NCBI GenBank assembly: GCA_053919585.1
Contig: CM132793.1
DNA: 64,000 nucleotides
Reading direction: 5' to 3' (one strand)
Source: Euprymna scolopes
Taxonomy: Eukaryota
A program made the translations under genes and the position numbers. Shown one piece after another: positions 34,582-62,425 of this stretch (its first letter is position 1; each line of letters starts with the position of its first letter). Below the pieces are notes generated by a model, which worked only from the letters and a program-made list of their open reading frames with translations, had not been told where the DNA came from and made no database searches.

Positions 34582-35532
34582 TCATATTCTTCTTGAATGC
34601 TTGTTAAGCATCCGCACTGGGATACTGTAGTTGTATATATAGTGCGGTAGTTCTGCAGTTAATCCGTTTGAAGGTTGTATGTCTTTGAAGGTATTGTTTG
34701 GTATGCAAGTTAGACTTTCTAGGTTTCCGTATCCAATGTATTGACCTTTGTCTTTGTATATTTGGAACCAAGGTTGAGGATTCGGTACGAATACTTCCTC
34801 ATTGTTCTTCGTGAGGAATTCTCCGCAAATGACGTTTTTTATTTCGCAGCCAATACTTTTTACTCTGTATGCTGTTGCTGTGTTCATCATCGATTCCCAC
34901 TGGTTTTGTTTTACCCATGTGGTTAAAAAGTATGGCACTATGTAATCTTTCGAGGTCGGTTGTGCCCAAGCGTATTCTCCGATGTCCTCGTATTTACCGT
35001 TAGATTCGTATTTATGGAATGTCGCTTTACAATCGTTCATGCTTGAAGTTCTTATTAAGTTTCGAAATGTTCTTTTTACTGTGTATGTGCGTTGGATGTT
35101 TCCACTTTCTGTTTGGATGTGCGGACCGTAGTGGATACCTTCCCATCCATTTGATCCCGATTCCGTCGACGGTTCAGTAGTACCCTCGTCCATTTGCGTC
35201 CTAGGTATATTGTCAGTGCTATCAGCAGTACCCACGGTGGGATCACCTCTGAAATAATCGTCCAATGCAAGTGCGTGTTTTGCTTTAATAGCGGTCCTAG
35301 CGATGCCCCCGATGATTCCAGTGCCCTCGGTGTTTTTGATGAATTCCTCATCCGCCTCCTTTGTGGTTACGCGTGCGTCTCCGTAAGCTATGTCGTGTAC
35401 CTTAGCAGCTAGATCTAGTTTGTTTCTTGGTGTAAATTTGAATTTTTTACTATCGGTGCCCGGTCTGAGGAAGTCGTACCCTGGTACAGTGAATTCTAAC
35501 TTGGTCCGACGTCGCTTTCGCGGTGGAGGCAT
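34582..35532 (-). pseudogene. VP (A' variant), 3' truncated
   Basis: NLS PPPRKRRR, PLA2 with GPG changed to RPG; diverged from VP-A mainly at synonymous sites. Confidence 0.92.
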
Positions 35533-36948
35533 ACTGCGTTGGTTTCATGCTGTATGTGTTTATATATTACTAAGTAGGTCAACATCTGTGACTATTGCGT
35601 CATGTCTATTTATAGATGTGATAATATTTTATTTATACCTAATGTCTGGTTTCTAGTAATGGCACTATTACTTTTACATTGATCGATCTAATGTATGGAG
35701 TGCAACGACTACACGACACTACCAGTGAAAAAGAAAATACAATACCAGACTGGTAGTGTTGTGTAGTCGTTGCACTCCATACATTAGATCGAACAATGTA
35801 AAAGTAAAAGTGCCATTACTAGAAACATTAGATCGATCCATGTAAAAGTAATAGTGCCACATTAGGGGATTTAATTCCAGTGTTCCCCATTCTTGTAGGT
35901 CGTCCATTGCTGTTCTGGTTGTGAAGAGGAACATTCGGTTTATCATTGCCTGTTTTTCGTTTGCTACGTGATGCATGGAGTTCGTTTTAGTATTCGCTCA
36001 CTCTGGTGCTTGACATTTACGTAGGTGTCAGTGCCCTCAAGGATACACTTTGCCTCCTCTACGTTCTGTGGCGTAAACCACAGCTCCTCCATAAATATCA
36101 AGCTCTTGTCGACGCAGCTTCCGAAGGTGAAGTTGTCGCTTGCCTGACAGCGCATGCGACCTGCGTTCATTAAACCGTTTCTTATGCTTCGTAGTATATA
36201 TGATTTCCCCGAGTTAGACGGCCCCGTGATGTGTAGCGCGTTTTTTTTTTTCTGACGTATTTTGTGACATACCTCGAACGTACTAGTAGCGAACTCGTCG
36301 GCATCAATGTGGTGATAAGTCAGCCATTCGTCGTATATGTCCAGGGATTTCTGGACGGGCCAGTATTGATGCGTCATGGCTGAGAATAGCTCGTGTTTTT
36401 CACATATCTGTTCATGGATTGGTGTCACGTTTAATGGTGGGGTGTGTGGCGTAGTTCATATTTTTAAAAAAATCTCTTATAAGGTTTAGAATAAAATAGA
36501 ATACGTGAGAATTGGGCTGATAGCTGGCCGTATTGGTGCCTACATTACTTCCTCCTTACCTTATATGATTGAATCCTTTTTGATTGCGTGTGTGCCTAAA
36601 ACTTTGATTCATCCCAGGTCAGGTGTCATGGCCGCCGAAAAAGTTTCTTTCCTCTCAGGTCAGGTCTTCTTCTGAAAATAACTATTACATGCTTGTACCA
36701 TGCTTATACATGCAAATATCATGCCATACATGCGATCGAAATTCCAATATATATAATACATACTCCAATATAATATTTAATATAGTTTATTATAGTAATG
36801 AATCGTACAATAGAAAAGATAGTTTTTAATTTGTTAGTATACAATGTGTGTGTGTGTGTGTTAGTAGTAATAGTAGGTCGCACCAGACCTTAGAGTGTAG
36901 AAAGTTTTTGTCCGCCATCTTGCCAGACCTTAGATACTTAAATTAACA
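35455..36948. repeat. Module M1 (VP 5' end, promoter, hairpin H1, NS1 fragment, terminal module B)
   Basis: Near-identical copies at 43571-45083, 49463-50926 and 57556-59068. Confidence 0.93.
35649..35826. repeat. Terminal hairpin H1 (78-bp arms, 22-nt loop); copies at 43763, 49629, 57748
   Basis: Arms 35649-35726 and 35749-35826 are reverse complements with few mismatches; lies upstream of VP. Confidence 0.92.
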
Positions 36949-37389
36949 TAAACGTTTAATGGTGGAGGGGGGGCACTCTACATAGAGATTTTTTTATTTT
37001 CTCTGACAGGTTTTGAATAAAATAGAATACGGGAGAATTGGACTTATCTAAGTTGCCACTTAGTGCCATGCTCTAATACCTTACCTTATAGAGTTTATAG
37101 AAATATAATGCGCGCGCGTAGAAAAACTTTCATTCATCTAATGTCTGGTGGTTCTGAAAAATAATTTCATGCATCTCATGTCATGCAGAAGGAAAAATAT
37201 TAAAATACAAACACATGTATGGTATTATATATATATATGTTTATTATACAATAATATTGCAATTACAATAATAATTCCAATAATAATAGTAATAATAATA
37301 ATACAAAGAACAGACATTAGATAGGAAAAAGTTTTTTGGCGGCCATGACACCTTAGACTTAGACCATAGATTAATTTCTTTTTTATCAG

Positions 37390-39140
37390 TCAGAGTCTGT
37401 CAGCAATTCCTCGCAGTACATTACCAATGTCTGCAAGGATTTTGTTTGTTTGTGCGTTATGTGTATGCGTGTGCAGTTCTCTGTCCCGTATTAATGTGAA
37501 CTCGTTGATGTTTTTTTTTTTTTTTTTTTCGTCGTTGTTCTCTTTGTCGTCGTCGCTGTCAGTTATTATGATCAAGTCTGTACTGTCTGTGTCTGGTGGC
37601 GCCGACGGCGAATTACTATTTGTCATCATTTCCTCTAAGTCAGAGTCCGTGAATGGTACTGTGTCCTCGGAGTCGTTTGGTGGCGTCGGACAGTTTATGG
37701 GATGTCCGTGTGTCAAACATACCTGGGCTGGCTGGTCTGGATCTAGGATGCACTGCTCGTTCATTTCAGGCAGTAAGTTGCGCCGCACGTCTCGTACTCG
37801 TAGTTTCTTCGAAGGACTGTGTTTGTCCTCCTCCTTCCACGTGTATCTTGATGAAGGTTTTGGTTGTGCGGTCAATTTTCCTGCCTTCGGGATGTAACCG
37901 TCTCGCTGGTAGTCCGTGATGTGTTTCCGCCATATTGTCAGCCACATCAGCGGGTTGAGTTCTAACGTTCCCCATCCCTTTAGGTCGTCCATCGCTGTTC
38001 GGGTTGTAAACAGGAACATCCTGTTGATCATGGCCTGTTTTTCGTTGGCCACGTGACGCCATGGTTCGTCGTTGCTGGTGGACAAGCAGGGCGTGCGTTT
38101 TAGGATTCGCTCGCTCTGGTGCTTCACGTTCACGTAGGTGTCCGTTCCTTCTAGGATGCACTTGGCTTCCTCGACGTTCTGTGGCATGAACCACATTTCT
38201 TCCGTAAATATGAGGCTCTTGTCTACGCAGCTGCCGAAAGTGAAGTTGTCACTCGCCTGGCATCTCATTCTTCCCGCGTTCATCAGACCGTTTCTGATGC
38301 TGCGAAGGATGTATGATTTTCCCGAATTTGATGGTCCGGTGATGTGTAGAGCATTTTTCTTGGGCCTTATTTTGTGGCAAACCTCGAACGTCCCCGTTGC
38401 GAACTCGTCGGCGTCGATCTGGTGGTACTCCAGCCATTCGTCGTAGATGTCTAGCGACTTTTGTACCGGCCAGTACTGGTGTGTCATAGCCGAGAATAGC
38501 TCGTGTTTCTCACGAATCTGTTCGTGGATCGGCGTGACCCGGCTCTGTATTTGGACGTCCGTAGCTGCAGCGGCTATGATGTTCGATAGGTTTGCCGTGT
38601 TTTTATGTATGCTCGCCCAGGTCTGTCTCGTCGACGGTTTTGCCGCTCTAGCGCAGTAAATCATCAGGTCTCCGACGTCCGTGGAATTCGCCTTCTTCAT
38701 GATTTTTGTGAGAAAGTCGTATTTTTGACCTCTCAGGCTGTCTGATTTGTTGGCTAGGCGCGATTCCTCGAGTTCCGGACTTGGCTCCCTGATGGTCTTC
38801 TCCGTTAGTTTCCGTAGCATAGCCAGTTGTCGTTCTGTCGTCAGGTTACCCGCCGATAGCACCGTTCTGATGCTCGGATCCGTCGTCAAGTACGTGCAAA
38901 GCCCGTAAGGACTGTATACCTTTGGACACGTCATGGTATACGCCTGTTCCCCTCGGTCCTGCAGCGTCCTCTTCAAGCGACTGAATCCATACTCGCTGGT
39001 CGGATGCTCGAAATGCCAACTGATGACGTGGAAATGGTCCACGTCTGAGCAGTTTTTCAGTCGGCTCGGTCCTGCTTTGTGGTAGACTACAATGTTCGGC
39101 CTTTGGTCGAGCAGGTTCGCCAGCAGTGAGTTTTCGCGGT
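37390..39140 (-). pseudogene. NS1: NS1-A copy, 5' truncated
   Basis: Near identical to 45528-47283; breaks at about 39140. Confidence 0.92.
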
Positions 39141-39224
39141 AGTTACATCAGTGTCAGTGCGGTTTAGAAAATATTTACAAAAGTCTATGTGATCATTGAT
39201 AAGTGTCATTGATAGAATACTTTA

Positions 39225-41208
39225 TCAATCGGAGTCACTGAGCACTTCTTCACATTCTAAAAATAGCTGTGACGTCGGCCCTCGTCCGTTGATTTGTCGT
39301 TGGTATATTGCTAATGTGTAGTTTATTATGTTTTTTTTTTTTTGTTTTTTTTGGTGTGACGAAGTCGTCCTCCTCCGGTTCTTCTGTTTCTGAGTCGCTG
39401 AGCACTATTACTCCGGAGATTGGCGAGTCCTCTATTACTGTGTCTTGAGACATGGTGGGTGCTGAGGGGCTGGGTTGGTTTGTTGCTGTAGGACATCTGT
39501 GTGCCTTGCAACCGTGGGTTTTACAGTACTGCGTCGGCTGGTTTTCGTCAATTTCACATGCCTCAGTCATCCAGTCCTCGACGTCGGAATCGTCTGAGAT
39601 ACGCAGGTTTTGTACCTCCTCTCCTCCCATGAGTTCTTTGAACAGTTGTCTTCGTGCCTTCATGTAACCCGCCTGTTTGTCTGGTGACAGGCCCTCTACT
39701 GCTTGGACAGTGAAGTTGGTCGATGCTGCTGGTTCCTCGATGTCTTCTTCCTCCTGGAATTGGTACGTCTGGTTCGTGTAGTCCATCACGTACTGTCTCC
39801 AGACGGTCAGCCACATTGTCGGATTGAGTTCTCGGACTCCCCATCCCTTTAGGGCAGGCATGGGCCTCTTCGTCTCGTAGAGGAACATTCGGTTGTGCAT
39901 TGCTGTTCTTTCCTGCGGGACGTGTCTCCAGGGGTCGTCGTTACTTGTAGACAGGCATGGTGTCCTCTCTAAGTATCGTTCCGCCTGGTGCTTCACGTTT
40001 ACCGCTGTTGTGGTACCTTCCAGGATGCACTTTCCCTCCTCTACATTTTGTGGTGTGAACCACATTTCGTCCGTGTAGATCAGTGTCTTGTCCACACAGG
40101 AGCCGAACGTGAAGTTGTCCGAAGCCTGACACCGCATTCGACCGCAGTTCATGAGCCCGTTTCTGATTGACCGTAACACGTAAGACTTGCCTGAGTTACT
40201 TGGTCCTGTTATGTGGAACCCGTTCTTTTTGGCCCATATCATGTGACATACTTCGAATAAGTTTCTTCCGAATTCTACCGGGTCAAAGTTGTGGTGTTGG
40301 GCCCAAACGTTGTATATGTCCAATGACTTTTGCACAGACCAATACCGGTTCCCGTCCATGCTGAAGAGGTCCTTCTTTTGCCGGATCTGTTCGAATATGG
40401 GTGTGACCTTTGTTTGGATTTGTAGGTCGCTTGCCGCTGCCTGCATGATCGGTTGAATGTTTTGGGTATTGGTAAATATGTGTTCCCATGTGTCACAGAC
40501 CTTTGCATTTGTGGATTGTTTACAGTAGAGCATGACTTTTGCCATGTCAGTACTGTTACATTTTCTCATTATATCGAGAATGAATTTATATTTTTGCCCT
40601 CTCAGGGTAGATTTTCCAGTGAGTCCTGTGTCTACCGCGGGTTCGTCCTGTTTCTTTAAGGGCTTGTCGCATATTTTTCTGTAGGTCGCTAGTTGACCGG
40701 GAGTTTCTAGGTGCCCTGCTGCTACTACTGTACGTTTTGACGGGTCCTGTGTTAGGTAACTGCAGAGCCCGTACGGGTTGTAAATTTTCTGGCATGAGAT
40801 TTGGTAGGGGTTTATCTGTCACTCGCCCTGGAGTTTTTTCATTTGCACGTAACTGTGCTCGCATGTCGGGTGGTTGTGGTGCCATGTTATCATGTGGAAG
40901 TGGTCCACGTCTGCGCAATGTTTCAAACTGCTTGGCCCTGCTACGTGGTATACTATTATGTATGGGCGCTGGTCTAGAATTCTGGCCAAGTACCCGTGGG
41001 TAGCGTTCGATGGCTGTAACGTTAGCGCCTCTTGGTAAGGTTTGGTCTCTGTCGTCCCCGGCTTAAGGCTGAACTCCTTTTCGGTTTCCCAGCGGTAGAT
41101 CCATGTGTACGGTCGGATTTGTTTGCCGTTTACAGTTTCTCCGTTGACTAAGGTATTGAAATGTTGTTGTTCTTCTCTTTGGTTGCTGGCGCTGGTCGTG
41201 GCTTCCAT
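39225..41208 (-). pseudogene. NS1: NS1 lineage B, full length with a frameshift near 40830
   Basis: DHFHMITW, GPSNSGKS, LIYTDE; ORF pieces 40819-41208 and 39250-40569. Confidence 0.9.
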
Positions 41209-41440
41209 CCTGAATGTCTGGAGCGTGTGCCTGATCGGTGGTTTATGTGCGTCTTTTATAGCAAGTATCTGCGTCGTAAGAATTAGAATCTGTTGCCGGT
41301 TTTGTAATTATCTCTGGTAGTAATTGAATTATGCTGACGTTGATGAATTTCGAAAATAGCTAATTGATTTTAGCTGACGCCTCGGAATTTAAAAAAGTAT
41401 ATATTTTGCTTACCGAGCGTTTAGTGTCTGTAGCTCCACC

Positions 41441-43288
41441 CTATTTGTTTACGAAACGCCCATAAGGCATGCCGAATATTTGACCGTTGTGGTCCCATAT
41501 GTGTGTGCCGTGATTATGAAGCATTCCTTTTGCTGATTGGCCGTGGAAATGTCTATTGGGCGGTACAATGGTGTGGTATTCGTAACTGAAGTCCGCCGAT
41601 GTTGCTGATAGTGCTTGTTTGTGGGTGGTGACTGGGACCTTCTGCGGGTGGATAAGTGCGTCACAGACTATTTCAATTTCTAGCATGTAAGTTAATTCGA
41701 AGTTGAAATATAAAATACCGGCGGTGCTGTTCGGGCGCAGTATAGGCGGAACATGTATTAGTACCATGTCTGGTGAGTCCTCGTTTGTGTAGAGCACCTT
41801 GTTAATCACTGTTCTGTCAGACATTGTTGTGCAACCGCTTGTTTGTATGTAAGTTGTCGCTCCGATGTCCACTTTTCCACTGTCCTTCTTCCCGGCGTCG
41901 CTCGTGTTTGTTTTTCTTCCTCTTTGGTGATCGAAGTTTAAGTCCGACACCTCTGTTTGTACTAGGTCCTCCTGCACTTCCTTACGTTGACGTTTTCGTG
42001 CACCCTGGCGGACGTTGTCCTCAGCTTTTCTCAGTATGGTACCGTAGGCCGGCGCGGTCGCTACCGATAAACCGCAGTCCCAGGCCGTTTTGACTCCCGA
42101 ATTTAACAGGTTAGTGATTAGTACCGGGTTTGATATCATACCTGCCTGTATTGTGTAGTTGCCCTGCATGGTAGTGTTGGTTAGTGGTCGTCTTAGTAAA
42201 CTGTGGTTTCGCCATACGTGTGTGAATGAGTCACCCTGTCGTAAGTTTTTTACGTTTGGCATTTCTCGCCAGTCGTGCAAGTCGATCATTTTCACCTGTG
42301 TTTTGTTTACTGAGTCCGAGAAGTTTCCAGTGTTTGTGATCGCATTGATTAGTTCGATCGGTGCCATGTAATTGTATGTGTAGGTTGGTAACTCTGCGTC
42401 TGCCCCTACCATGGGTTGGATTTCTGAGAAACCTTTGTTTGGGATTTTAGATATTCCTTCCAAGTTTCCGTAACCGATATATGAACCGTTGTCGATGTAG
42501 ATGTCGAAGTAGGGTTCTGGGTTTGGTACGAAGACTTCCTCGTTGTTTTTTGTCAGCCATTCACCGCATGTTATTTTCGATATTTTAAATCCTTGGCTGA
42601 CGATCCTGTACGCTGTCGCGTTTGACATTATCGCTTCCCATTTCGGCGGAGTTACCCAGGTAGTTAGGAAGTAGGGTACTATGTAGTCTTTCGATACCGG
42701 CTGTGACCATGAAAACCGGGCTGCTCCGTGTATGCCTTCCTTTGGGTCAGTGTCGTAGATCTGGAATATAGCTGCGCAATCATTCATGTTTGTCGTTTTG
42801 ACCTGGTTTTTGAAGCTCCTCTGTAAAACTACTCGTCTTACGTTGTTGTTAGTAATGGTTGGTAGCTCTCCTCCCTCCTCATTTCCTCCCCACGCTCCGC
42901 TGCCGTTGTCGTTCGCGACAGTGCTCGCCTCCGAATCGACTTCCATACCTGCTTCGCAGCTAGCAGTGTAAGTAGGATCAAGTTTAATTCGTTTAGGTGG
43001 GGGATCGAAGTAGTCGTCCAGTCCCAGGTAATGCTTTGCTCTGAGTGCCCCTCGCGATAAAGCTCCCAACAGACCTGTTCCAACAGAGTCCTTGTAGAAT
43101 TGGTCATCTGCTTCTTTGGTCTTGCCTTTTCCGTAGTTGAAATCGTGTCTTTTTGCTGCCCAGTCCAAACGATTTAGGGGAGGCAGGTATTTTTTGTAAT
43201 CGAGGTCAGTACCAGGCCCTAGGAACCTGTGGTACGGTACCGTCCACTCCGACCTCCTCGCTTTCTTCTGGTGTCTTACCGGTGGCAT
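41441..43288 (-). CDS. VP1: Capsid protein lineage B, open 615 aa, N-terminal PLA2
   Basis: FLGPG...LDWAAKRHDFNY...ADDQF; collinear with VP-A. Confidence 0.92.
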   Translation of the reverse strand: MPPVRHQKKARRSEWTVPYHRFLGPGTDLDYKKYLPPLNRLDWAAKRHDFNYGKGKTKEADDQFYKDSVGTGLLGALSRGALRAKHYLGLDDYFDPPPKRIKLDPTYTASCEAGMEVDSEASTVANDNGSGAWGGNEEGGELPTITNNNVRRVVLQRSFKNQVKTTNMNDCAAIFQIYDTDPKEGIHGAARFSWSQPVSKDYIVPYFLTTWVTPPKWEAIMSNATAYRIVSQGFKISKITCGEWLTKNNEEVFVPNPEPYFDIYIDNGSYIGYGNLEGISKIPNKGFSEIQPMVGADAELPTYTYNYMAPIELINAITNTGNFSDSVNKTQVKMIDLHDWREMPNVKNLRQGDSFTHVWRNHSLLRRPLTNTTMQGNYTIQAGMISNPVLITNLLNSGVKTAWDCGLSVATAPAYGTILRKAEDNVRQGARKRQRKEVQEDLVQTEVSDLNFDHQRGRKTNTSDAGKKDSGKVDIGATTYIQTSGCTTMSDRTVINKVLYTNEDSPDMVLIHVPPILRPNSTAGILYFNFELTYMLEIEIVCDALIHPQKVPVTTHKQALSATSADFSYEYHTIVPPNRHFHGQSAKGMLHNHGTHIWDHNGQIFGMPYGRFVNK

Positions 43289-43304
43289 TGTGGTTATATA
43301 TGTT

Positions 43305-43360
43305 GTAATTGCGTCATTTCTATTTATAGATTACGATTATTGCGTCATTATGACGTCATC
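43305..43360 (-). promoter_or_regulatory. VP promoter: TATA/MEF2-like CTATAAATAG with TGACGCAAT and TGACGTCA sites
   Basis: ATCTATAAATAGA.ATGACGCAAT is conserved between lineage B and lineage A/A' (35594-35617). Confidence 0.6.
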
Positions 43361-43384
43361 ATTAGTGAAAATATTATATTAGTC

Positions 43385-43573
43385 GCAGCAATGAAGTAGT
43401 GGCACTACCCAAATTATTTAGCAGTCACAGGTCTGACGTGCAAACCTCTCGTAATTTCATCAGTCACTGATGAATACGATACAATAATCCGTGACTGATG
43501 AAATTACGAGAGGTTTGCACGTCAGACCTGTGACTGCTAAATAATTTGGGTAGTGCCACTACTTCATTGCTGC
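43385..43573. repeat. Terminal hairpin H2 of virus B (83-bp arms, 23-nt loop); copy at 57370-57558
   Basis: Arms 43385-43467 and 43491-43573 are reverse complements. Confidence 0.93.
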
Positions 43574-45083
43574 CCGGTCTGAGGAAGTCGTACCCTGGTA
43601 CAGTGAATTCTAACTTGGTCCGACGTCGCTTTCGCGGTGGAGGCATACTGCGTTGGTTTCATGCTGTATGTGTTTATATATTACTAAGTAGGTCAACATC
43701 TGTGACTATTGCGTCATGTCTATTTATAGATGTGATAATATTTTATTTATACCTAATATCTGGTTTCTAGTAATGGCACTATTACTTTTACATTGATCGA
43801 TCTAATGTATGGAGTGCAACGACTACACGACACTACCAGTGAAAAAGAAAATACAATACCAGACTGGTAGTGTTGTGTAGTCGTTGCACTCCATACATTA
43901 GATCGAACAATGTAAAAGTAAAAGTGCCATTACTAGAAACATTAGATCGATCCATGTAAAAGTAATAGTGCCACATTAGGGGATTTAATTCCAGTGTTCC
44001 CCATTCTTGTAGGTCGTCCATTGCTGTTCTGGTTGTGAAGAGGAACATTCGGTTTATCATTGCCTGTTTTTCGTTTGCTACGTGATGCCACGGCTTGTCG
44101 TTGCTCGTGGACAGGCATGGAGTTCGTTTTAGTATTCGCTCACTCTGGTGCTTGACATTTACGTAGGTGTCAGTGCCCTCAAGGATACACTTTGCCTCCT
44201 CTACGTTCTGTGGCGTAAACCACAGCTCCTCCATAAATATCAAGCTCTTGTCGACGCAGCTTCCGAAGGTGAAGTTGTCGCTTGCCTGACAGCGCATGCG
44301 ACCTGCATTCATTAAACCGTTTCTTATGCTTCGTAGTATATATGATTTCCCCGAGTTAGACGGCCCCGTGATGTGTAGCGCGGTTTTTTTTTTTCTGACG
44401 TATTTTGTGACATACCTCGAACGTACTAGTAGCGAACTCGTCGGCATCAATGTGGTGATAAGTCAGCCATTCGTCGTATATGTCCAGGGATTTCTGGACG
44501 GGCCAGTATTGATGCGTCATGGCTGAGAATAGCTCGTGTTTTTCACATATCTGTTCATGGATTGGTGTCACGTTTAATGGTGGGGTGTGTGGCGTAGTTC
44601 ATATTTTTTTAAAAATCTCTTATAAGGTTTAGAATAAAATAGAATACGTGAGAATTGGGCTGATAGCTGGCCGTATTGGTGCCTACATTACTTCCTCCTT
44701 ACCTTATATGATTGAATCCTTTTTGATTGCGTGTGTGCCTAAAACTTTGATTCATCCCAGGTCAGGTGTCATGGCCGCCGAAAAAGTTTCTTTCCTCTCA
44801 GGTCAGGTCTTCTTCTGAAAATAACTATTACATGCTTGTACCATGCTTATACATGCAAATATCATGCCATACATGCGATCGAAATTCCAATATATATAAT
44901 ACATACTCCAATATAATATTTAATATAGTTTATTATAGTAATGAATCGTACAATAGAAAAGATAGTTTTTAATTCGTTAGTATACAATGTGTGTGTTAGT
45001 AGTAATAGTAGGTCGCACCAGACCTTAGAGTGTAGAAAGTTTTTGTCCGCCATCTTGCCAGACCTTAGATACTTAAATTAACA
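43571..45083. repeat. Module M2
   Basis: Copy of M1 that lacks the 28-bp deletion. Confidence 0.92.
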
Positions 45084-53126: not shown

Positions 53127-53210
53127 AGTTACATCAGTGTCAGTGCGGTTTAGAAAATATTTACAAAAGTCTATGTGATCATTGATAAGTGTCATTGATA
53201 GAATACTTTA

Positions 53211-55193
53211 TCAATCGGAGTCACTGAGCACTTCTTCACATTCTAAAAATAGCTGTGACGTCGGCCCTCGTCCGTTGATTTGTCGTTGGTATATTGCTAA
53301 TGTGTAGTTTATTATGTTTTTTTTTTTGTTTTTTTTTGGTGTGACGAAGTCGTCCTCCTCCGGTTCTTCTGTTTCTGAGTCGCTGAGCACTATTACTCCG
53401 GAGATTGGCGAGTCCTCTATTACTGTGTCTTGAGACATGGTGGGTGCTGAGGGGCTGGGTTGGTTTGTTGCTGTAGGACATCTGTGTGCCTTGCAACCGT
53501 GGGTTTTACAGTACTGCGTCGGCTGGTTTTCGTCAATTTCACATGCCTCAGTCATCCAGTCCTCGACGTCGGAATCGTCTGAGATACGCAGGTTTTGTAC
53601 CTCCTCTCCTCCCATGAGTTCTTTGAACAGTTGTCTTCGTGCCTTCATGTAACCCGCCTGTTTGTCTGGTGACAGGCCCTCTACTGCTTGGACAGTGAAG
53701 TTGGTCGATGCTGCTGGTTCCTCGATGTCTTCTTCCTCCTGGAATTGGTACGTCTGGTTCGTGTAGTCCATCACGTACTGTCTCCAGACGGTCAGCCACA
53801 TTGTCGGATTGAGTTCTCGGACTCCCCATCCCTTTAGGGCAGGCATGGGCCTCTTCGTCTCGTAGAGGAACATTCGGTTGTGCATTGCTGTTCTTTCCTG
53901 CGGGACGTGTCTCCAGGGGTCGTCGTTACTTGTAGACAGGCATGGTGTCCTCTCTAAGTATCGTTCCGCCTGGTGCTTCACGTTTACCGCTGTTGTGGTA
54001 CCTTCCAGGATGCACTTTCCCTCCTCTACATTTTGTGGTGTGAACCACATTTCGTCCGTGTAGATCAGTGTCTTGTCCACACAGGAGCCGAACGTGAAGT
54101 TGTCCGAAGCCTGACACCGCATTCGACCGCAGTTCATGAGCCCGTTTCTGATTGACCGTAACACGTAAGACTTGCCTGAGTTACTTGGTCCTGTTATGTG
54201 GAACCCGTTCTTTTTGGCCCATATCATGTGACATACTTCGAATAAGTTTCTTCCGAATTCTACCGGGTCAAAGTTGTGGTGTTGGGCCCAAACGTTGTAT
54301 ATGTCCAATGACTTTTGCACAGACCAATACCGGTTCCCGTCCATGCTGAAGAGGTCCTTCTTTTGCCGGATCTGTTCGAATATGGGTGTGACCTTTGTTT
54401 GGATTTGTAGGTCGCTTGCCGCTGCCTGCATGATCGGTTGAATGTTTTGGGTATTGGTAAATATGTGTTCCCATGTGTCACAGACCTTTGCATTTGTGGA
54501 TTGTTTACAGTAGAGCATGACTTTTGCCATGTCAGTACTGTTACATTTTCTCATTATATCGAGAATGAATTTATATTTTTGCCCTCTCAGGGTAGATTTT
54601 CCAGTGAGTCCTGTGTCTACCGCGGGTTCGTCCTGTTTCTTTAAGGGCTTGTCGCATATTTTTCTGTAGGTCGCTAGTTGACCGGGAGTTTCTAGGTGCC
54701 CTGCTGCTACTACTGTACGTTTTGACGGGTCCTGTGTTAGGTAACTGCAGAGCCCGTACGGGTTGTAAATTTTCTGGCATGAGATTTGGTAGGGGTTTAT
54801 CTGTCACTCGCCCTGGAGTTTTTTCATTTGCACGTAACTGTGCTCGCATGTCGGGTGGTTGTGGTGCCATGTTATCATGTGGAAGTGGTCCACGTCTGCG
54901 CAATGTTTCAAACTGCTTGGCCCTGCTACGTGGTATACTATTATGTATGGGCGCTGGTCTAGAATTCTGGCCAAGTACCCGTGGGTAGCGTTCGATGGCT
55001 GTAACGTTAGCGCCTCTTGGTAAGGTTTGGTCTCTGTCGTCCCCGGCTTAAGGCTGAACTCCTTTTCGGTTTCCCAGCGGTAGATCCATGTGTACGGTCG
55101 GATTTGTTTGCCGTTTACAGTTTCTCCGTTGACTAAGGTATTGAAATGTTGTTGTTCTTCTCTTTGGTTGCTGGCGCTGGTCGTGGCTTCCAT
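53211..55193 (-). pseudogene. NS1: NS1-B duplicate with the same frameshift
   Basis: Offset 13985 from the first copy. Confidence 0.9.
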
Positions 55194-55425
55194 CCTGAAT
55201 GTCTGGAGCGTGTGCCTGATCGGTGGTTTATGTGCGTCTTTTATAGCAAGTATCTGCGTCGTAAGAATTAGAATCTGTTGCCGGTTTTGTAATTATCTCT
55301 GGTAGTAATTGAATTATGCTGACGTTGATGAATTTCGAAAATAGCTAATTGATTTTAGCTGACGCCTCGGAATTTAAAAAAGTATATATTTTGCTTACCG
55401 AGCGTTTAGTGTCTGTAGCTCCACC

Positions 55426-57273
55426 CTATTTGTTTACGAAACGCCCATAAGGCATGCCGAATATTTGACCGTTGTGGTCCCATATGTGTGTGCCGTGATT
55501 ATGAAGCATTCCTTTTGCTGATTGGCCGTGGAAATGTCTATTGGGCGGTACAATGGTGTGGTATTCGTAACTGAAGTCCGCCGATGTTGCTGATAGTGCT
55601 TGTTTGTGGGTGGTGACTGGGACCTTCTGCGGGTGGATAAGTGCGTCACAGACTATTTCAATTTCTAGCATGTAAGTTAATTCGAAGTTGAAATATAAAA
55701 TACCGGCGGTGCTGTTCGGGCGCAGTATAGGCGGAACATGTATTAGTACCATGTCTGGTGAGTCCTCGTTTGTGTAGAGCACCTTGTTAATCACTGTTCT
55801 GTCAGACATTGTTGTGCAACCGCTTGTTTGTATGTAAGTTGTCGCTCCGATGTCCACTTTTCCACTGTCCTTCTTCCCGGCGTCGCTCGTGTTTGTTTTT
55901 CTTCCTCTTTGGTGATCGAAGTTTAAGTCCGACACCTCTGTTTGTACTAGGTCCTCCTGCACTTCCTTACGTTGACGTTTTCGTGCACCCTGGCGGACGT
56001 TGTCCTCAGCTTTTCTCAGTATGGTACCGTAGGCCGGCGCGGTCGCTACCGATAAACCGCAGTCCCAGGCCGTTTTGACTCCCGAATTTAACAGGTTAGT
56101 GATTAGTACCGGGTTTGATATCATACCTGCCTGTATTGTGTAGTTGCCCTGCATGGTAGTGTTGGTTAGTGGTCGTCTTAGTAAACTGTGGTTTCGCCAT
56201 ACGTGTGTGAATGAGTCACCCTGTCGTAAGTTTTTTACGTTTGGCATTTCTCGCCAGTCGTGCAAGTCGATCATTTTCACCTGTGTTTTGTTTACTGAGT
56301 CCGAGAAGTTTCCAGTGTTTGTGATCGCATTGATTAGTTCGATCGGTGCCATGTAATTGTATGTGTAGGTTGGTAACTCTGCGTCTGCCCCTACCATGGG
56401 TTGGATTTCTGAGAAACCTTTGTTTGGGATTTTAGATATTCCTTCCAAGTTTCCGTAACCGATATATGAACCGTTGTCGATGTAGATGTCGAAGTAGGGT
56501 TCTGGGTTTGGTACGAAGACTTCCTCGTTGTTTTTTGTCAGCCATTCACCGCATGTTATTTTCGATATTTTAAATCCTTGGCTGACGATCCTGTACGCTG
56601 TCGCGTTTGACATTATCGCTTCCCATTTCGGCGGAGTTACCCAGGTAGTTAGGAAGTAGGGTACTATGTAGTCTTTCGATACCGGCTGTGACCATGAAAA
56701 CCGGGCTGCTCCGTGTATGCCTTCCTTTGGGTCAGTGTCGTAGATCTGGAATATAGCTGCGCAATCATTCATGTTTGTCGTTTTGACCTGGTTTTTGAAG
56801 CTCCTCTGTAAAACTACTCGTCTTACGTTGTTGTTAGTAATGGTTGGTAGCTCTCCTCCCTCCTCATTTCCTCCCCACGCTCCGCTGCCGTTGTCGTTCG
56901 CGACAGTGCTCGCCTCCGAATCGACTTCCATACCTGCTTCGCAGCTAGCAGTGTAAGTAGGATCAAGTTTAATTCGTTTAGGTGGGGGATCGAAGTAGTC
57001 GTCCAGTCCCAGGTAATGCTTTGCTCTGAGTGCCCCTCGCGATAAAGCTCCCAACAGACCTGTTCCAACAGAGTCCTTGTAGAATTGGTCATCTGCTTCT
57101 TTGGTCTTGCCTTTTCCGTAGTTGAAATCGTGTCTTTTTGCTGCCCAGTCCAAACGATTTAGGGGAGGCAGGTATTTTTTGTAATCGAGGTCAGTACCAG
57201 GCCCTAGGAACCTGTGGTACGGTACCGTCCACTCCGACCTCCTCGCTTTCTTCTGGTGTCTTACCGGTGGCAT
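55426..57273 (-). CDS. VP1: Capsid protein B duplicate, open 615 aa
   Basis: Translation the same as 41441-43288. Confidence 0.92.
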   Translation of the reverse strand: MPPVRHQKKARRSEWTVPYHRFLGPGTDLDYKKYLPPLNRLDWAAKRHDFNYGKGKTKEADDQFYKDSVGTGLLGALSRGALRAKHYLGLDDYFDPPPKRIKLDPTYTASCEAGMEVDSEASTVANDNGSGAWGGNEEGGELPTITNNNVRRVVLQRSFKNQVKTTNMNDCAAIFQIYDTDPKEGIHGAARFSWSQPVSKDYIVPYFLTTWVTPPKWEAIMSNATAYRIVSQGFKISKITCGEWLTKNNEEVFVPNPEPYFDIYIDNGSYIGYGNLEGISKIPNKGFSEIQPMVGADAELPTYTYNYMAPIELINAITNTGNFSDSVNKTQVKMIDLHDWREMPNVKNLRQGDSFTHVWRNHSLLRRPLTNTTMQGNYTIQAGMISNPVLITNLLNSGVKTAWDCGLSVATAPAYGTILRKAEDNVRQGARKRQRKEVQEDLVQTEVSDLNFDHQRGRKTNTSDAGKKDSGKVDIGATTYIQTSGCTTMSDRTVINKVLYTNEDSPDMVLIHVPPILRPNSTAGILYFNFELTYMLEIEIVCDALIHPQKVPVTTHKQALSATSADFSYEYHTIVPPNRHFHGQSAKGMLHNHGTHIWDHNGQIFGMPYGRFVNK

Positions 57274-57555
57274 TGTGGTTATATATGTTGTAATTGCGTC
57301 ATTTCTATTTATAGATTACGATTATTGCGTCATTATGACGTCATCATTAGTGAAAATATTATATTAGTCGCAGCAATGAAGTAGTGGCACTACCCAAATT
57401 ATTTAGCAGTCACAGGTCTGACGTGCAAACCTCTCGTAATTTCATCAGTCACTGATGAATACGATACAATAATCCGTGACTGATGAAATTACGAGAGGTT
57501 TGCACGTCAGACCTGTGACTGCTAAATAATTTGGGTAGTGCCACTACTTCATTGC

Positions 57556-59068
57556 TGCCCGGTCTGAGGAAGTCGTACCCTGGTACAGTGAATTCTAACT
57601 TGGTCCGACGTCGCTTTCGCGGTGGAGGCATACTGCGTTGGTTTCATGCTGTATGTGTTTATATATTACTAAGTAGGTCAACATCTGTGACTATTGCGTC
57701 ATGTCTATTTATAGATGTGATAATATTTTATTTATACCTAATATCTGGTTTCTAGTAATGGCACTATTACTTTTACATTGATCGATCTAATGTATGGAGT
57801 GCAACGACTACACGACACTACCAGTGAAAAAGAAAATACAATACCAGACTGGTAGTGTTGTGTAGTCGTTGCACTCCATACATTAGATCGAACAATGTAA
57901 AAGTAAAAGTGCCATTACTAGAAACATTAGATCGATCCATGTAAAAGTAATAGTGCCACATTAGGGGATTTAATTCCAGTGTTCCCCATTCTTGTAGGTC
58001 GTCCATTGCTGTTCTGGTTGTGAAGAGGAACATTCGGTTTATCATTGCCTGTTTTTCGTTTGCTACGTGATGCCACGGCTCATCGTTGCTCGTGGACAGG
58101 CATGGAGTTCGTTTTAGTATTCGCTCACTCTGGTGCTTGACATTTACGTAGGTGTCAGTGCCCTCAAGGATACACTTTGCCTCCTCTACGTTCTGTGGCG
58201 TAAACCACAGCTCCTCCATAAATATCAAGCTCTTGTCGACGCAGCTTCCGAAGGTGAAGTTGTCGCTTGCCTGACAGCGCATGCGACCTGCGTTCATTAA
58301 ACCGTTTCTTATGCTTCGTAGTATATATGATTTCCCCGAGTTAGACGGCCCCGTGATGTGTAGCGCGTTTTTTTTTTTCTGACGTATTTTGTGACATACC
58401 TCGAACGTACTAGTAGCGAACTCGTCGGCATCAATGTGGTGATAAGTCAGCCATTCGTCGTATATGTCCAGGGATTTCTGGACGGGCCAGTATTGATGCG
58501 TCATGGCTGAGAATAGCTCGTGTTTTTCACGTATCTGTTCATGGATTGGTGTCACGTTTAATGGTGGGGTGTGTGGCGTAGTTCATATTTTTAAAAAAAT
58601 CTCTTATAAGGTTTAGAATAAAATAGAATACGTGAGAATTGGGCTGATAGCTGGCCGTATTGGTGCCTACATTACTTCCTCCTTACCTTATATGATTGAA
58701 TCCTTTTTGATTGCGTGTGTGCCTAAAACTTTGATTCATCCCAGGTCAGGTGTCATGGCCGCCGAAAAAGTTTCTTTCCTCTCAGGTCAGGTCTTCTTCT
58801 GAAAATAACTATTACATGCTTGTACCATGCTTATACATGCAAATATCATGCCATACATGCGATCGAAATTCCAATATATATAATACATACTCCAATATAA
58901 TATTTAATATAGTTTATTATAGTAATGAATCGTACAATAGAAAAGATAGTTTTTAATTCGTTAGTATACAATGTGTGTGTGTTAGTAGTAATAGTAGGTC
59001 GCACCAGACCTTAGAGTGTAGAAAGTTTTTGTCCGCCATCTTGCCAGACCTTAGGTACTTAAATTAAC
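57556..59068. repeat. Module M4
   Basis: M2-type copy; terminal module B here runs on into the NS1-C 3' region. Confidence 0.92.
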
Positions 59069-59197
59069 AACCAAGGAATTATTATTTCCGAATGACTATC
59101 TGACAGTACTTCGTCTGTGTATAGTGTATGTAGTATGTGTAAGTTTCCGTCTAGTTCTCTTTGTCTGATGTGCCAGAATTCATTAAGTCAATAGTCT

Positions 59198-61044
59198 TTA
59201 GCAGTGTTTTTTTTTTTTTTTTTTTGGTTGTGGTGATAACCTTTCGGCTATGTACAGTATTTGTTTGTCGCTGTCGTGGTCGTCTTCCTCGTCGCTTGAT
59301 AATTGTATGATGTCGGGTAATTCTGTATTTGTCGGGGAATTTCGTGGTGTCATCATGTCGGAGATTTCGTTGTCGTTTTGAAAGTTTAATGCGCAGTGGA
59401 CCATTTTTTTTCCATGCGTCTTGCAGTATTGCGTCGGGAATCTTTCGTCGAGTTCACAGTACCCGTACAGTGCGTCAAATTCTTCTGATAGGTTTCTTTT
59501 CACGCTGTTTGTTTTTCTTTTTTTTTTTTTTTGGCGATTCCTGGTCGTTATTGCTCGCGTTGTATCGTTTGGATGTTCTAGGTTGTTGTATATTGTCCAT
59601 TTCTATAATGGTGTATTTATTGTTTGTGTATTTGTTGATCTGTTCCCGCCAAATGGTAAGCCACATTAGTGGGTTTAGTTCGATAACCCCCCATGTTTTT
59701 AGCATGTCCATTTTACGTTTTGTCGTGTATGTGAATAATCTGTTCTGCATAGTCTTTTTTTCGGACGCGACGTGTCTCCACGGGTCGTCATTCGAGGTGC
59801 TTATGCACGGAGTCCTTTTTAGTATGCGTTCTTGTTGGTGTTTCACATTTACGTATGTGTCTGCACCTTCAAGAATGCATTTGGCCTCCTCTATGTTCTG
59901 CGGCGTAAACCACATTTCCTCTGTGAAAATGAGGCTTTTGTCGACACAGCTTCCGAATGTAAAATTATCGGAAGCCTGGCATCTCATTCTACCGCAGTTC
60001 ATGAGACCGTTTTTTATACTTCTGAGCATGTAAGATTTACTCGAGTTACTGGGTCCTGTGATATGGAACCCGTTGATTTTTGCTCGGATCTTATGGCATA
60101 CCTCGAATAGTTCTGTAGCAAATTTCTCTGGGTCGAAGGAATGATGGTTACACCATTCTTCATAAATGTCTAGCGATTTTTGAATTGACCAATATCGTGT
60201 TGTGTCATCCTGAAATAGATTTTTTTTTTGTCGTATCTGTTCCCATATAGGTGTGATTCTCGTGTGTATTTGAATGTCCGATGCTGCTGCGTGTATAATG
60301 TTTTGGAGATTCGGTGTGTTCTTATGTATATTTCTCCATGTATTTTTGTGGTGCTCTGGTGCTTGATTCTGACAGTATAGCATAATGTCTCCTATATCTG
60401 TCGAATTACACTTCTTCATCATTTTTAGGATGAAGTCGTATTTTTTGCCTCTGAGTGTGTCTCCTTTGGTGTTTAGGTCGGTGTCTTCGTCACTGATGTT
60501 CAGCAATGGTCTTTGTAGTAAGTCGCTCCAGGAAGCTTTTCTGTCTCTCCGTTGACAGGTTCCCTGCGCTTATCACCTGCCGTTTTTCTGGTTCTGCCTC
60601 AAAGTACTGGCATAGTCCGTGAGGAGAATACACTTTTGAGCATGTCATGTTGTAGGGTCTTAATGGTCTTTCGTTCAGCGCTTTTTTCAGTGCTCCGAAG
60701 CCGTACTCACATGTCGGATGGTCGTGATGCCAGCTGATCATGTGGAAGTGGTCCACGTCACTGCAATTTTTCATTTTTGATGGGCTTGCCTTGTGGTATA
60801 TACATATGTACGGTCTTTGTTCCCCAACGCTTTTAAGATATTTATGTGTATTTTTCTTTAAGTTCATGGTTAGTGTGTGTGGTAATGTGTGTAGTTCTTT
60901 TTCGTTCGACGTTATTTTGAATTCGTTTTCCGTCTCCCACCTGTAGATCCAAGTGTATGGTGTTTGTTTTTTTCCGTCCTTTGTATCCGCGAGAATGTAT
61001 TCATTCCAGTTTAATTTTTCCTCAAGTTTTGTTTGTCCGGCCAT
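59198..61044 (-). pseudogene. NS1: NS1 lineage C, full length with two frameshifts
   Basis: DHFHMISW; Walker A altered to GPSNSSKS; three ORF pieces. Confidence 0.9.
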
Positions 61045-61214
61045 AGCGTTCTTGTGGCTGTCTGTTCGTAGTCTGGTGTGCCGTTCCCGTTGTCGTGTAT
61101 TATATAATGTTTGGTGACGTCATCATATTACGCTTAATCTGCAATTTTTTAAGTCACGTGATTTTAACAAGTTCCAACGTGTTCAAGAATGTGCTGACGC
61201 TATTGTAATTTGAT

Positions 61215-62425
61215 CTACTTGTTTACGAATTTTCCGTAATGGAATCCCAATGTCTTTCCTTGGTGTCCTGATAAGTGTGTTCCGTGGTTATGTATCATGC
61301 CCTTTGCTGATTGGCTGTGGAGATGTCGATTGGGCGGGACTATGCAGTTTAGTTCGTAATTGAAACCGGCGTCCGTAGCCATCTCCGCACATGTGTGATC
61401 GTTCATTGGTAATTTTTGTGGGTGTGCAAATGATTCGTACCAGCATTCTATTTCTAACATGTACGTTGTTTCGAAAACAAAGTACAAGATACCCGTTTGT
61501 GCTGATGGTCGGAGTATTGGTGGTACATTTATCAAAATCATTTCCGGGGCGTCCTCGTTTGTATATAGTACTTTGTTAATTAACGTTCTGTTGGCTACGG
61601 TAAACGCCCCTGATGTTTGGTTATACCCTGAAATATTTTTATCGTCTTTTTCTTTTTTGCCTGTGCTGTTTGATTTTCTTCCCCTTTGGTGATCGAATGC
61701 AAGGTCGGCTACTTCTGTCATAGTCAGGTCCTCTTGTACTTCTGTTCTTTGTCGTTTTCTTGGTTTATAAGATTCTAAGTTTTCCTCTGCTTTTGTTGCA
61801 ATTGTCCCGTATTTTGGTGCTGTGGATATGTCTAGTCCGGCGTCCCAGGCGGTTGGATTTCCTCCACTTATGGATGATTGCAGTATGCTTGCACTGGAAA
61901 TCATTGCTCCTTGTATGACGTAGTTACCTTGTGTCATGATGTTAGTTATTGGTTTTCTAAGCAGACTGTGATTATGCCATATATGTGTGAAAGTGTCTCC
62001 CTGTCTTACTTTTGTGTGCGGCATCTCTCTCCAGTCGTGAAAGTTTATCATTTTTGTGTCTGTTGCTAGTGTATGTGCGTCTATTGGGGTTGTGTTTGGT
62101 AACTTGTTTAATAAATGTATCGGTGCTGCGTAGTTGTATTTATATTTTGGTAGTTCGGCAGTTGTTCCTATCATCGGTTGGATTTCGGTGAATTCATTGT
62201 TTGGTACTGTTGATATCCCTTCCAGGTTTCCGTAACCGATGTAGTTTCCTCTATCTATGAATATATCAAAGTAAGGTTGTGGATTTGGTACGAATATTTC
62301 CTCGTTATTCTTTGTTAGCCATTCCCCGCATATGATGTTGTCGAGTGTTACTCCGATGCTTTTCACTCTGTACGATGTAGCCGTGTTGAGCATCGCTTCC
62401 CATTTATTGTTTGTTACCCATGTAC
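61215..62425 (-). pseudogene. VP lineage C, 5' truncated
   Basis: 392-aa open segment ending GKFVNK; homology stops at about 62425. Confidence 0.9.

What the first reader, a model, noticed from the sequence alone, without database searches (positions are those of the whole stretch)
35455..62425. Kilobase-scale repeat-spacer array: a 1.5-kb module four times, separated by captured viral genomes
Seen: M1-[A end, part NS1-A, virus B]-M2-[whole virus A]-M3-[A end, part NS1-A, virus B]-M4-[virus C]. The module holds a hairpin terminus, a promoter and a terminal module, so it has candidate NS1 origin sequences. Inference: resident viral termini act as landing pads, so each new genome enters next to them and the module is duplicated, loosely like AAV Rep-dependent integration at AAVS1. 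The result would be a self-extending record of infections. Plain tandem duplication explains part of the pattern.
Basis: partly seen in the sequence, partly recalled or inferred. Interest (0 to 1): 0.85.

Follow-up and report, generated by a model that had tools for sequence, protein, structure and literature searches.

The report
Nested parvovirus genomes sharing a junction module
A 28-kb stretch of what is probably a mollusc genome holds four or five different parvovirus genomes joined head to tail, and the 1.5-kb "repeat" between them is a scrap of viral ends copied by ordinary recombination, not a dedicated capture device.

Summary
A ~1.5-kb module sits at 35457-36948, 43571-45083, 49437-50926 and 57556-59069, with copies differing by under 1% in substitutions. 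Between the copies lie parvovirus genomes A, B (twice) and C.

The "repeat-spacer" reading is only partly supported.
- The module is itself viral. It joins an A-type left end (178-nt hairpin, TATA-like element, first 25 VP codons), an NS1 helicase fragment of a fourth virus (D), and a right-end fragment.
- Spacers 1 and 3 are one event. The two B copies differ by one substitution in 4429 nt.
- Shared derived characters and a mosaic third module point to homology-templated block duplication.
- Junctions lie at viral termini: one within 5 nt of a hairpin tip, another at the outer end of a full palindrome.
- Nothing places a junction at an NS1 nick site.

All recognisable viral and transposon remnants in the 64-kb window lie on the minus strand, as in a piRNA-cluster-like nest.

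These viruses place VP before NS1 on one strand, as do six independent public contigs. I found no description of that order.

An assembly artefact cannot be excluded without reads.

The parts
34600..35456 (-). 3'-truncated VP gene of virus A'' (codons ~26-311; its first 25 codons lie in M1). Frame open, no stops or frameshifts.
   Evidence: tblastn: 88% aa identity to VP-A. 17.6% nt divergence from the A copy without gaps. dN/dS 0.07.
35457..36948 (-). Module copy M1.
   Evidence: Shares a derived 28-nt deletion with M3.
36949..39140 (-). p1: right end of virus A (half of the right hairpin, 3' untranslated region) plus 5'-truncated NS1-A (aa 74-656). Frame open.
39141..43573 (-). Virus B copy 1 (4433 nt). 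Order: left palindrome, VP-B (open), NS1-B (one in-frame stop). The right end is truncated and has no right hairpin.
   Evidence: Pfam. Gene-state counts. Sharp junction with p1.
43385..43573 (.). 189-nt left terminal palindrome of virus B. Its outer end abuts M2 with about 3 nt of microhomology.
   Evidence: 87-nt arms, 99% complementary. Fold -108.9 kcal/mol, z -28. Alignment.
43571..45083 (-). Module copy M2 (the reference copy for the sub-parts listed next).
43571..43973 (-). Module sub-part LE: an A-type left genome end. It holds VP codons 1-25, TATA-like elements, a 178-nt hairpin (43763-43940) and a 42-nt partial third arm.
   Evidence: (z -20).
43970..44571 (-). Module sub-part: NS1 helicase fragment of a fourth virus, D (equivalent to NS1-A aa 274-471). 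It shows 0-2 frame changes depending on the copy.
   Evidence: 80% nt but 91-95% aa identity to NS1-A. Pfam Parvo_NS1 E = 1e-17 to 1e-18. pN/pS 0.05.
44570..45083 (-). Module sub-part: 513-nt right-end fragment of a D-type genome. It starts about 2 nt past the equivalent of the right-hairpin axis.
   Evidence: 44570-44664 matches 45087-45182 at 75%. Carries two copies of the motif CAGACCTTAGA.
45084..49839 (-). Virus A, genome-length (4756 nt). On the minus strand: left palindrome, VP-A (49512-47662, open), NS1-A (47501-45531, open), 447-nt 3' region, then one arm of the right hairpin.
   Evidence: HUH histidine pair and Walker motifs are conserved.
49437..50926 (-). Module copy M3, a mosaic. 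Its left-end part differs from the other copies. Its D part carries M1's derived deletion.
   Evidence: 7 of 8 private substitutions fall in the first 360 of 1522 columns, P = 2.6e-4.
50927..53126 (-). p3: second copy of the truncated virus A right part. The NS1-A part has two frame changes.
   Evidence: 3 substitutions against p1 in 2192 nt. Counts.
53127..57558 (-). Virus B copy 2. VP open; NS1 has one in-frame stop. Left palindrome at 57370-57558.
   Evidence: 1 substitution and 1 single-base indel against copy 1 in 4430 columns..
57556..59069 (-). Module copy M4.
   Evidence: Its two private substitutions lie in the last third.
59070..62435 (-). Virus C (partial). VP is 5'-truncated (equivalent to VP-B aa 206-614) and open. 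NS1 has two frame changes. The right end is truncated near the NS1 end, with no hairpin.
22447..25098 (-). It has NS1 (one in-frame stop) and a complete right terminal palindrome (22447-22532).
   Evidence: 5.7% nt divergence from p1-p3. 43-nt arms, 100% complementary. Fold z -16. Alignment.

Best explanation
The array is a young nest of endogenous parvovirus genomes. It was built by end-joining at viral termini and then enlarged by the host's own homology-directed repair. It lies in a region that collects viral and transposon debris in one orientation.

Each genome unit reads, on the minus strand: left palindrome, VP, NS1, right hairpin. The 1.5-kb module is the junk at a head-to-tail junction. 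It consists of the left end of an A-type genome preceded by two scraps of a fourth virus, D.

The shortest history I can reconstruct, read on the plus strand, is:
0. A''(part) | module | A | module | C.
1. Virus B was captured between two copies of a 3.7-kb resident segment (module plus NS1-A part).
2. A break in the module next to C was repaired by copying from M1 through p1 and B1 into M2. This created M3-p3-B2-M4.

Shown:
- the anatomy and the junction positions;
- the grouping (M1,M3) and (M2,M4), and the mosaic nature of M3;
- at least two ages of duplication;
- separate viral lineages;
- a strand bias over the whole window.

Inferred:
- the repair mechanisms (hairpin-tip opening and end-joining; synthesis-dependent copying);
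- whether step 0 happened in an episomal concatemer or in the chromosome;
- the idea that the region is a piRNA source.
For: Module composition.

Junctions at termini:
- The three module|A junctions lie 5 nt past the axis of A's right hairpin. The older copy A' keeps that hairpin whole.
- The D right-end fragment starts about 2 nt past the same point.
- B's complete palindrome abuts the module by its outer end.

Duplication history:
- B1/B2 differ by 1 substitution in 4429 nt, p1/p3 by 3 in 2192, p1/p2 by 7 in 2189.
- The age classes differ: Fisher P = 0.007 and 0.025.
- M1 and M3 share a derived 28-nt deletion, and p1 and p3 share derived sites.
- M3's private changes cluster in its left-end part, P = 2.6e-4.

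Separate viruses:
- A'' against A: dN/dS 0.07 with dS about 1.
- D against A: pN/pS 0.05.

Genome plan: VP then NS1 on one strand in six independent Logan contigs, four of them 4.1-4.5 kb.

Nest: about 24 parvoviral pieces, 7 transposon or CRESS-Rep remnants and 41 of 51 long ORFs are on the minus strand. None of 8 plus-strand ORFs tested has a Pfam domain.

Precedents:
- densovirus head-to-tail concatemers in tapeworm genomes (PMC6880638);
- concatemeric, ITR-rearranged AAV proviruses (PMC2900306);
- a shrimp IHHNV element bounded by a repeated 591/590-bp sequence (PMC8982415).
Against: - The module's high end is exact to the base in two different contexts (next to A and next to C). A random chromosomal break does not predict this. 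It fits better with an end created at a viral terminus.
- The B junction and the switch from 82% to over 99% identity between A'' and A lie within about 30 nt of each other. This is a coincidence unless the events are linked.
- M2/M4 differ more (5-7 substitutions in 1512 nt) than B1/B2 (1 in 4429; P = 0.005). Exchange among module copies or error-prone palindromes must therefore be invoked.
- There are no reads, no small-RNA data and no second individual, so neither the reality of the array nor piRNA production has been shown.
Confidence: 0.6

Rival explanations
1. Landing-pad capture. Resident viral termini in the module recruit incoming genomes, either through NS1 acting at an origin-like site or through homology with the incoming terminus. 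Each entry duplicates resident sequence, so the locus extends itself as a record of infections.
For: - Two arrivals are each flanked by a direct duplication of resident viral sequence: B by 3.7 kb, A by the 1.1-kb D patch.
- A's left end merges without an indel into resident-type sequence inside the palindrome.
- NS1-A is open and keeps the HUH histidines and Walker motifs.
- The 11-nt motif CAGAC[AC]TTAGA is enriched (28 hits against 2.4 expected) and sits in the hairpin arms and right-end regions.
- At least three separate integrations of the A lineage (A', A'', A) lie in one 64-kb window in one orientation.
- AAV integration at AAVS1 is reported to duplicate part of the target. I take this from the title of Henckaerts et al. 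2009 as listed in the references of PMC2900306. The paper itself is not held.
Against: - No junction lies at or beside a hairpin base, where a nick site would be expected.
- B keeps a complete palindrome, as expected for plain end-joining.
- The last module duplication brought in no new virus.
- Transposon remnants share the orientation, which viral homology cannot explain.
- Only two informative events exist.
Confidence: 0.15
2. One-step origin. A mixed episomal concatemer of co-infecting viruses A, B, C and defective D pieces, already holding the repeated junction, integrated once. Nothing was added later.
For: - All units are head to tail and junctions are at termini.
- All copies are under 1% diverged.
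- Concatemeric, rearranged forms are the rule for latent AAV (PMC2900306).
- A repeated [A + D patch] unit would give base-exact junctions without further assumptions.
Against: - The copies fall into different ages (0.06%, 0.32%, about 1%).
- A derived deletion is shared by M1 and M3 but not M2.
- M3 is a mosaic.
- The VP of A'' is joined in frame to an A-type left end, despite synonymous divergence near saturation.
Confidence: 0.12
3. Assembly artefact. Reads from abundant episomal or replicating viral DNA, or from a collapsed or expanded repeat, were stitched onto a resident element (A'') because of shared sequence.
For: - Near-identity of B1 and B2.
- The left edge of the array is a homologous switch from 82% to over 99% identity with no indel.
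- Open reading frames in A and in VP-B.
- Some of the frame changes could be long-read indel errors.
Against: - The copies differ in ways typical of true paralogues: a shared 28-nt deletion, a different TG-repeat length in each of the four modules, and clustered private substitutions.
- B carries the same in-frame stop in both copies, and C is truncated and broken.
- The flanks hold older decayed copies in the same orientation.
Confidence: 0.12

Closest known systems
Integrated or episomal head-to-tail parvovirus concatemers (AAV proviruses; densovirus loci in Echinococcus multilocularis, PMC6880638; PMC2900306)
   Same: - Genome-length units in one orientation.
- Junctions in or at terminal palindromes, with rearranged scraps between units.
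- Located in repeat-rich, gene-poor DNA.
   Different: - Here the units are different viruses (49-60% aa identity between A, B and C) rather than copies of one.
- The same 1.5-kb junction patch recurs between them.
- The viruses place VP before NS1.
Nests of endogenous viral elements and transposons in piRNA clusters (arthropods)
   Same: - Dense mixture of viral and transposon fragments of different ages.
- All in one orientation.
- No host genes seen in 64 kb.
- The idea of an inherited archive of infections.
   Different: - Small RNAs were not examined.
- The host appears to be a mollusc.
- The youngest inserts are genome-length with terminal hairpins, not short fragments.
Shrimp IHHNV endogenous element bounded by a repeated 591/590-bp sequence (PMC8982415), and AAV integration at AAVS1 with partial target duplication (Henckaerts 2009, cited in PMC2900306)
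   Same: Parvoviral DNA flanked by a direct duplication, hundreds to thousands of bases long, of what was there before.
   Different: - Here the duplicated target is itself viral.
- The inserted genomes are not jumbled or inverted.
- No binding or nicking site has been identified.
CRISPR arrays
   Same: Only the picture: repeats alternating with pieces of invaders.
   Different: - The repeat is 1.5 kb of viral DNA, not a short host repeat.
- The spacers are whole genomes.
- One repeat-spacer pair arose by block duplication.
- There is no acquisition machinery, and the host is a eukaryote.

Membership tests
Parvoviridae-derived endogenous element | NS1 with an SF3 helicase domain and an HUH nuclease motif | tested here: met
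   Pfam Parvo_NS1, E = 1e-16 to 1e-19. PDB hits to Rep40/Rep68 at E = 1e-12. Invariant histidine pair and Walker A/B motifs in the alignment.
Parvoviridae-derived endogenous element | Capsid protein with an N-terminal VP1-type phospholipase A2 region | tested here: met
   Pfam Phospholip_A2_4. A profile search hits the N-termini of parvoviral VP1 chains. The jelly-roll body was not confirmed because the AlphaFold2 model was poor (pLDDT 40).
Parvoviridae-derived endogenous element | Linear 4-6 kb genome ending in palindromic hairpins | tested here: met
   A is 4756 nt and B is 4433 nt. Left palindromes are 178 and 189 nt, and the right palindrome is 86 nt.
Classical monosense or ambisense parvovirus genera | NS gene upstream of VP on one strand, or NS and VP on opposite strands | tested here: not met
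   VP precedes NS1 on the same strand in A, B and C and in six independent public contigs.
Head-to-tail proviral concatemer | Units in one orientation joined at genome termini | tested here: met
   All units are on the minus strand. A's right end, D's right end and B's left end are joined at or within 5 nt of terminal structures. The right ends of B and C are internal truncations.
piRNA cluster | Dense, strand-biased nest of transposon and virus fragments | tested here: met
piRNA cluster | Production of 24-31-nt small RNAs, mostly from one strand | not testable with these tools
   No small-RNA data are available here.
Rep/NS1-dependent site-specific integration (AAVS1 type) | Target holds a binding site with a nearby nick site, and the junction or the start of the duplication lies there | tested here: inconclusive
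   A repeated 11-nt motif is enriched in the termini, but its function is unknown. The duplication edges lie in VP codon ~25 and inside NS1-A, not at a hairpin base.
Rep/NS1-dependent site-specific integration (AAVS1 type) | Partial duplication of the target flanking the provirus | tested here: met
   B lies between two copies of a 3.7-kb segment. A lies between two copies of the 1.1-kb D patch.
CRISPR-like repeat-spacer array | Short host-encoded repeats, short spacers, polar one-by-one addition and linked acquisition genes | tested here: not met
   The repeat is 1.5 kb of viral patchwork. The spacers are 4.4-6.6 kb. One repeat-spacer pair is a block duplicate. No other genes lie in the array.

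The most novel reading that the evidence does not exclude
Resident parvoviral termini act as landing pads for later, related viruses, through homology with the incoming terminal palindrome or through NS1. Each entry duplicates resident sequence. The locus then becomes a heritable, self-extending archive of infections that may also feed small-RNA defence.
Probability: 0.15. Interest if true: 0.8.

Novelty: new variant of a known kind. Interest (0 to 1): 0.55.

Why it matters
Endogenous parvoviral elements are usually old fragments. This locus holds genome-length copies of several related viruses with their terminal palindromes and exact junctions. It therefore records how parvoviral DNA enters and then grows inside a germline: joining at hairpin tips, capture between duplicated resident segments, and later homology-templated expansion.

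It also documents a parvovirus clade with VP ahead of NS1 on one strand, probably in molluscs, and gives both of its termini. I found no description of that clade.

If population data showed different viruses between the same modules, the landing-pad idea would become directly testable from sequence alone.

Tried and rejected
Models rejected:
- Simple tandem duplication with a period of 13,980 nt. The VP piece left of M1 is 17.6% diverged from its supposed twin, and virus C stands where the second copy of A should be.
- Single unequal crossovers between modules. Every variant predicts five modules and two full copies of A.
- The module as an orthologous part of each virus. Module copies are over 99% alike, whereas the genes of A, B and C are 49-60% alike.
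- The CRISPR analogy (see the membership test).

Searches that led nowhere:
- Exact look-up of NS1-A and VP-B in public assemblies: not on record.
- IMG/VR scan with the NS1 alignment: only three distant helicase hits on 7.5-8 kb contigs.
- AlphaFold2 model of VP-A from 8 sequences: pLDDT 40, so no fold search was run.
- Sequence search of VP against solved structures: only the PLA2 region matches.
- Rfam and tRNA scans: nothing.
- Literature search for the run accessions of the related contigs: nothing.
- Literature searches for a VP-first parvovirus: nothing found, but these were not exhaustive.
- Henckaerts 2009 is not held in the library.

The host could not be named. One transposase ORF is closest to Octopus proteins (54-68% identity), followed by gastropod proteins.
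Full report
**1. Observation**

Self-comparison of the window confirms the module.
- The four copies lie at 35457-36948 (M1), 43571-45083 (M2), 49437-50926 (M3) and 57556-59069 (M4).
- They differ by 0.27-0.94% in substitutions, plus a few indels.
- No further full copy exists in the window.

- Module plus the adjoining 2.2 kb ('p') occurs three times: 35457-39140, 43571-47284 and 49437-53126.
- The block M1..M2 recurs as M3..M4, about 13,980 nt further on.
- There are no N runs in the window.

**2. What the pieces are**

All genes are on the minus strand. Pfam finds Parvo_NS1 and the VP1-type phospholipase A2 domain.

Reading the minus strand, each virus has VP first and NS1 second.
- Virus A: VP 49512-47662, NS1 47501-45531.
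- Virus B occurs twice.
- Virus C is partial.

This order is not an effect of permutation.
- Two Logan contigs of close relatives have the VP C-terminus directly upstream of NS1.
- Four contigs of 4.1-4.5 kb carry a PLA2 protein of 573-621 aa followed by NS1 on one strand.

The termini agree with this order.
- A 178-nt hairpin lies about 117 nt upstream of the VP-A start.
- A 189-nt hairpin lies about 100 nt upstream of VP-B.
- An 86-nt perfect palindrome lies downstream of NS1 in an older copy, A', at 22447-22532.

The genome plan is therefore: left palindrome, VP, NS1, right hairpin, 4.4-4.8 kb in all. Reviews describe parvovirus genomes as monosense or ambisense (PMC13426907). I found no description of a VP-first monosense plan, but the search was not exhaustive. 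That classical monosense genera place NS first rests on my own knowledge.

Only the N-terminal PLA2 region of VP matches solved capsid proteins. The structure model was too poor to use. That this protein is the capsid rests on the PLA2 region and on the absence of any other large ORF.

**3. The module is viral patchwork**

In M2 coordinates the module has three parts.
- 43571-43973 is an A-type left end. It holds VP codons 1-25, TATA-like elements, the hairpin and a partial third arm.
- 43970-44571 is an NS1 helicase fragment. It is 80% identical to NS1-A in DNA but 91-95% in protein, with pN/pS 0.05. It therefore comes from a fourth virus, D, that diverged under selection.
- 44570-45083 is a right-end fragment of a D-type genome. 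Its first 95 nt match the terminal 95 nt of A at 75%.

**4. Junctions**

- *Module high edge.* It meets A's right end three times and virus C once. The break is exact to the base. On the A side it lies 5 nt beyond the axis of the right hairpin, as the intact palindrome of A' shows. The D right-end fragment begins about 2 nt beyond the same point. Hairpin ends opened near the tip and then ligated are what end-joining of closed parvoviral termini is expected to give. That expectation is my own knowledge (Artemis/DNA-PKcs processing of AAV hairpins) and was not tested here.
- *B left end.* B's complete palindrome abuts the module low edge by its outermost bases, with about 3 nt of microhomology.
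- *B right end.* It is truncated 112 nt after NS1 and joins the interior of NS1-A sharply.
- *C right end.* It is truncated near the end of NS1.

**5. History from copy differences**

- The two B copies differ by 1 substitution and 1 single-base indel in 4430 columns. p1/p3 differ by 3 substitutions in 2192 nt and p1/p2 by 7 in 2189.
- p1 and p3 share derived sites. M1 and M3 share a 28-nt deletion that is derived relative to NS1-A. M2 and M4 share two substitutions.
- M3 has 8 private substitutions, 7 of them in the first 360 of 1522 columns (P = 2.6e-4). M4's two private substitutions lie in the last third.
- M3 is therefore a mosaic of its own left end and M1's D part.

This is the signature of a break in one module that was repaired by copying from M1 through p1 and B1 into M2.

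Undoing that event, and then the earlier duplication of module plus p that brackets B, leaves A''(part) | module | A | module | C.

Divergence classes of about 1%, 0.32% and 0.06% differ significantly (P = 0.025 and 0.007). Growth was therefore stepwise, unless the copies were drawn from a variable viral population.

**6. Left flank**

- The VP piece at 34600-35456 is open and 88% identical to VP-A in protein. It is 17.6% diverged in DNA, with dN/dS 0.07 and dS about 1. It is another virus, A''.
- It runs in frame into M1, which is over 99% identical to M3 from about 27 nt inside the module onward.
- One of these two joints is therefore a homologous recombination joint. It arose in a virus population, during integration, or by later conversion.
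- It lies within about 30 nt of the B junction. I cannot explain this other than by linked events or conversion tracts ending at the edge of homology.

**7. State of the genes (counts only)**

| Element | VP | NS1 |
|---|---|---|
| A | open | open |
| p1 | - | 5'-truncated, open |
| p3 | - | 5'-truncated, two frame changes |
| B1 and B2 | open | one in-frame stop each |
| C | 5'-truncated, open | two frame changes |
| A'' | 3'-truncated, open | - |
| A' | - | one in-frame stop |

The D fragments show none to two frame changes, depending on the copy. Open frames are expected at this low divergence and say nothing about function.

**8. Surroundings**

The whole window is a nest.
- About 24 parvoviral pieces of many ages lie on the minus strand. 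They include older VP-then-NS1 remnants at 18174-21917.
- Two ISXO2-like transposase remnants, a Tc1-like transposase, BEL/Pao-like and Ty3-like pieces and a circovirus-like Rep all lie on the minus strand.
- 41 of 51 ORFs of at least 120 aa are on the minus strand.
- None of the eight plus-strand ORFs tested has a domain.
- There are no tRNA or Rfam hits.

This is what a uni-strand piRNA cluster looks like, but small RNAs were not examined.

The best named relatives of one transposase ORF are Octopus proteins (54-68%), followed by gastropod proteins. The host is tentatively a mollusc.

**9. Verdict on mechanism**

The structure is best read as end-joined parvoviral genomes in a debris-collecting locus, later expanded by homology-templated repair.

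Twice a new genome is bracketed by a duplication of resident viral sequence. This resembles reported target duplication at AAV and IHHNV integration sites (PMC2900306 reference list; PMC8982415).

Nothing ties the events to NS1 or to a defined site, and one of the three growth steps added no virus.

An assembly artefact remains possible.

This report gives outer bounds only. The consensus lines printed by the alignment tools were not used.

Noticed in passing
window 45084-49839, 39141-43573, 59070-62435; loci L001, L004, L006, L007 and two contigs without DNA (ERR3431203, ERR14857108): These parvoviruses encode VP (with PLA2) upstream of NS1 on the same strand, between unlike left and right hairpins. 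Six independent public contigs share the order. I found no paper describing it.
   Followed up: partly
window 1-64000: Every recognisable viral or transposon remnant lies on the minus strand, and AT skew is negative throughout. This looks like a uni-strand piRNA-cluster-like nest.
   Followed up: partly
window 16030-16952 (-): Circovirus-like Rep remnant (Pfam Viral_Rep E = 4e-19, plus a P-loop helicase piece), embedded among the parvoviral fragments.
   Followed up: no
window 22447-25098 (-): Older A-lineage copy with a perfect 43+43-nt terminal palindrome preserved, next to a Ty3-like RT/RNase H remnant (25022-26294).
   Followed up: yes
window, 28 sites; e.g. 45019, 45059, 45274, 45449, 43801, 43892, 4899: The 11-nt motif CAGAC[AC]TTAGA is enriched (28 hits against 2.4 expected). 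It sits in the hairpin arms and right-end regions of several viruses. It may be a protein-binding element, but its function is unknown.
   Followed up: partly
window 47342-47893 (-) and 24732-25058 (-): A 183-aa ORF overlaps the end of VP-A and the start of NS1-A in another frame. It recurs at 79% identity, with three stops, in copy A'. No Pfam domain.
   Followed up: no
window 18174-21917 (-): Older, diverged remnants in the order NS1 helicase, VP, NS1 N-terminus, NS1 helicase. They are consistent with an earlier head-to-tail pair of VP-first genomes.
   Followed up: no
window 30058-30250: Inverted repeat with 72-nt arms (90% complementary) and a 49-nt loop, in AT-rich DNA. It could be a MITE or another viral terminus.
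   Followed up: no
window 5256-6068 (-) and 28559-28978 (-): ISXO2-like (IS1595-type) transposase ORFs. The first is intact. Its closest named relatives are Octopus proteins (54-68% identity), which is the only hint to the host.
   Followed up: partly
locus L005 (SRR24189490): An NS1 fragment that is 95% identical in protein but only 83-85% identical in DNA to NS1-A. It is a further strain of the A lineage in another dataset.
   Followed up: no
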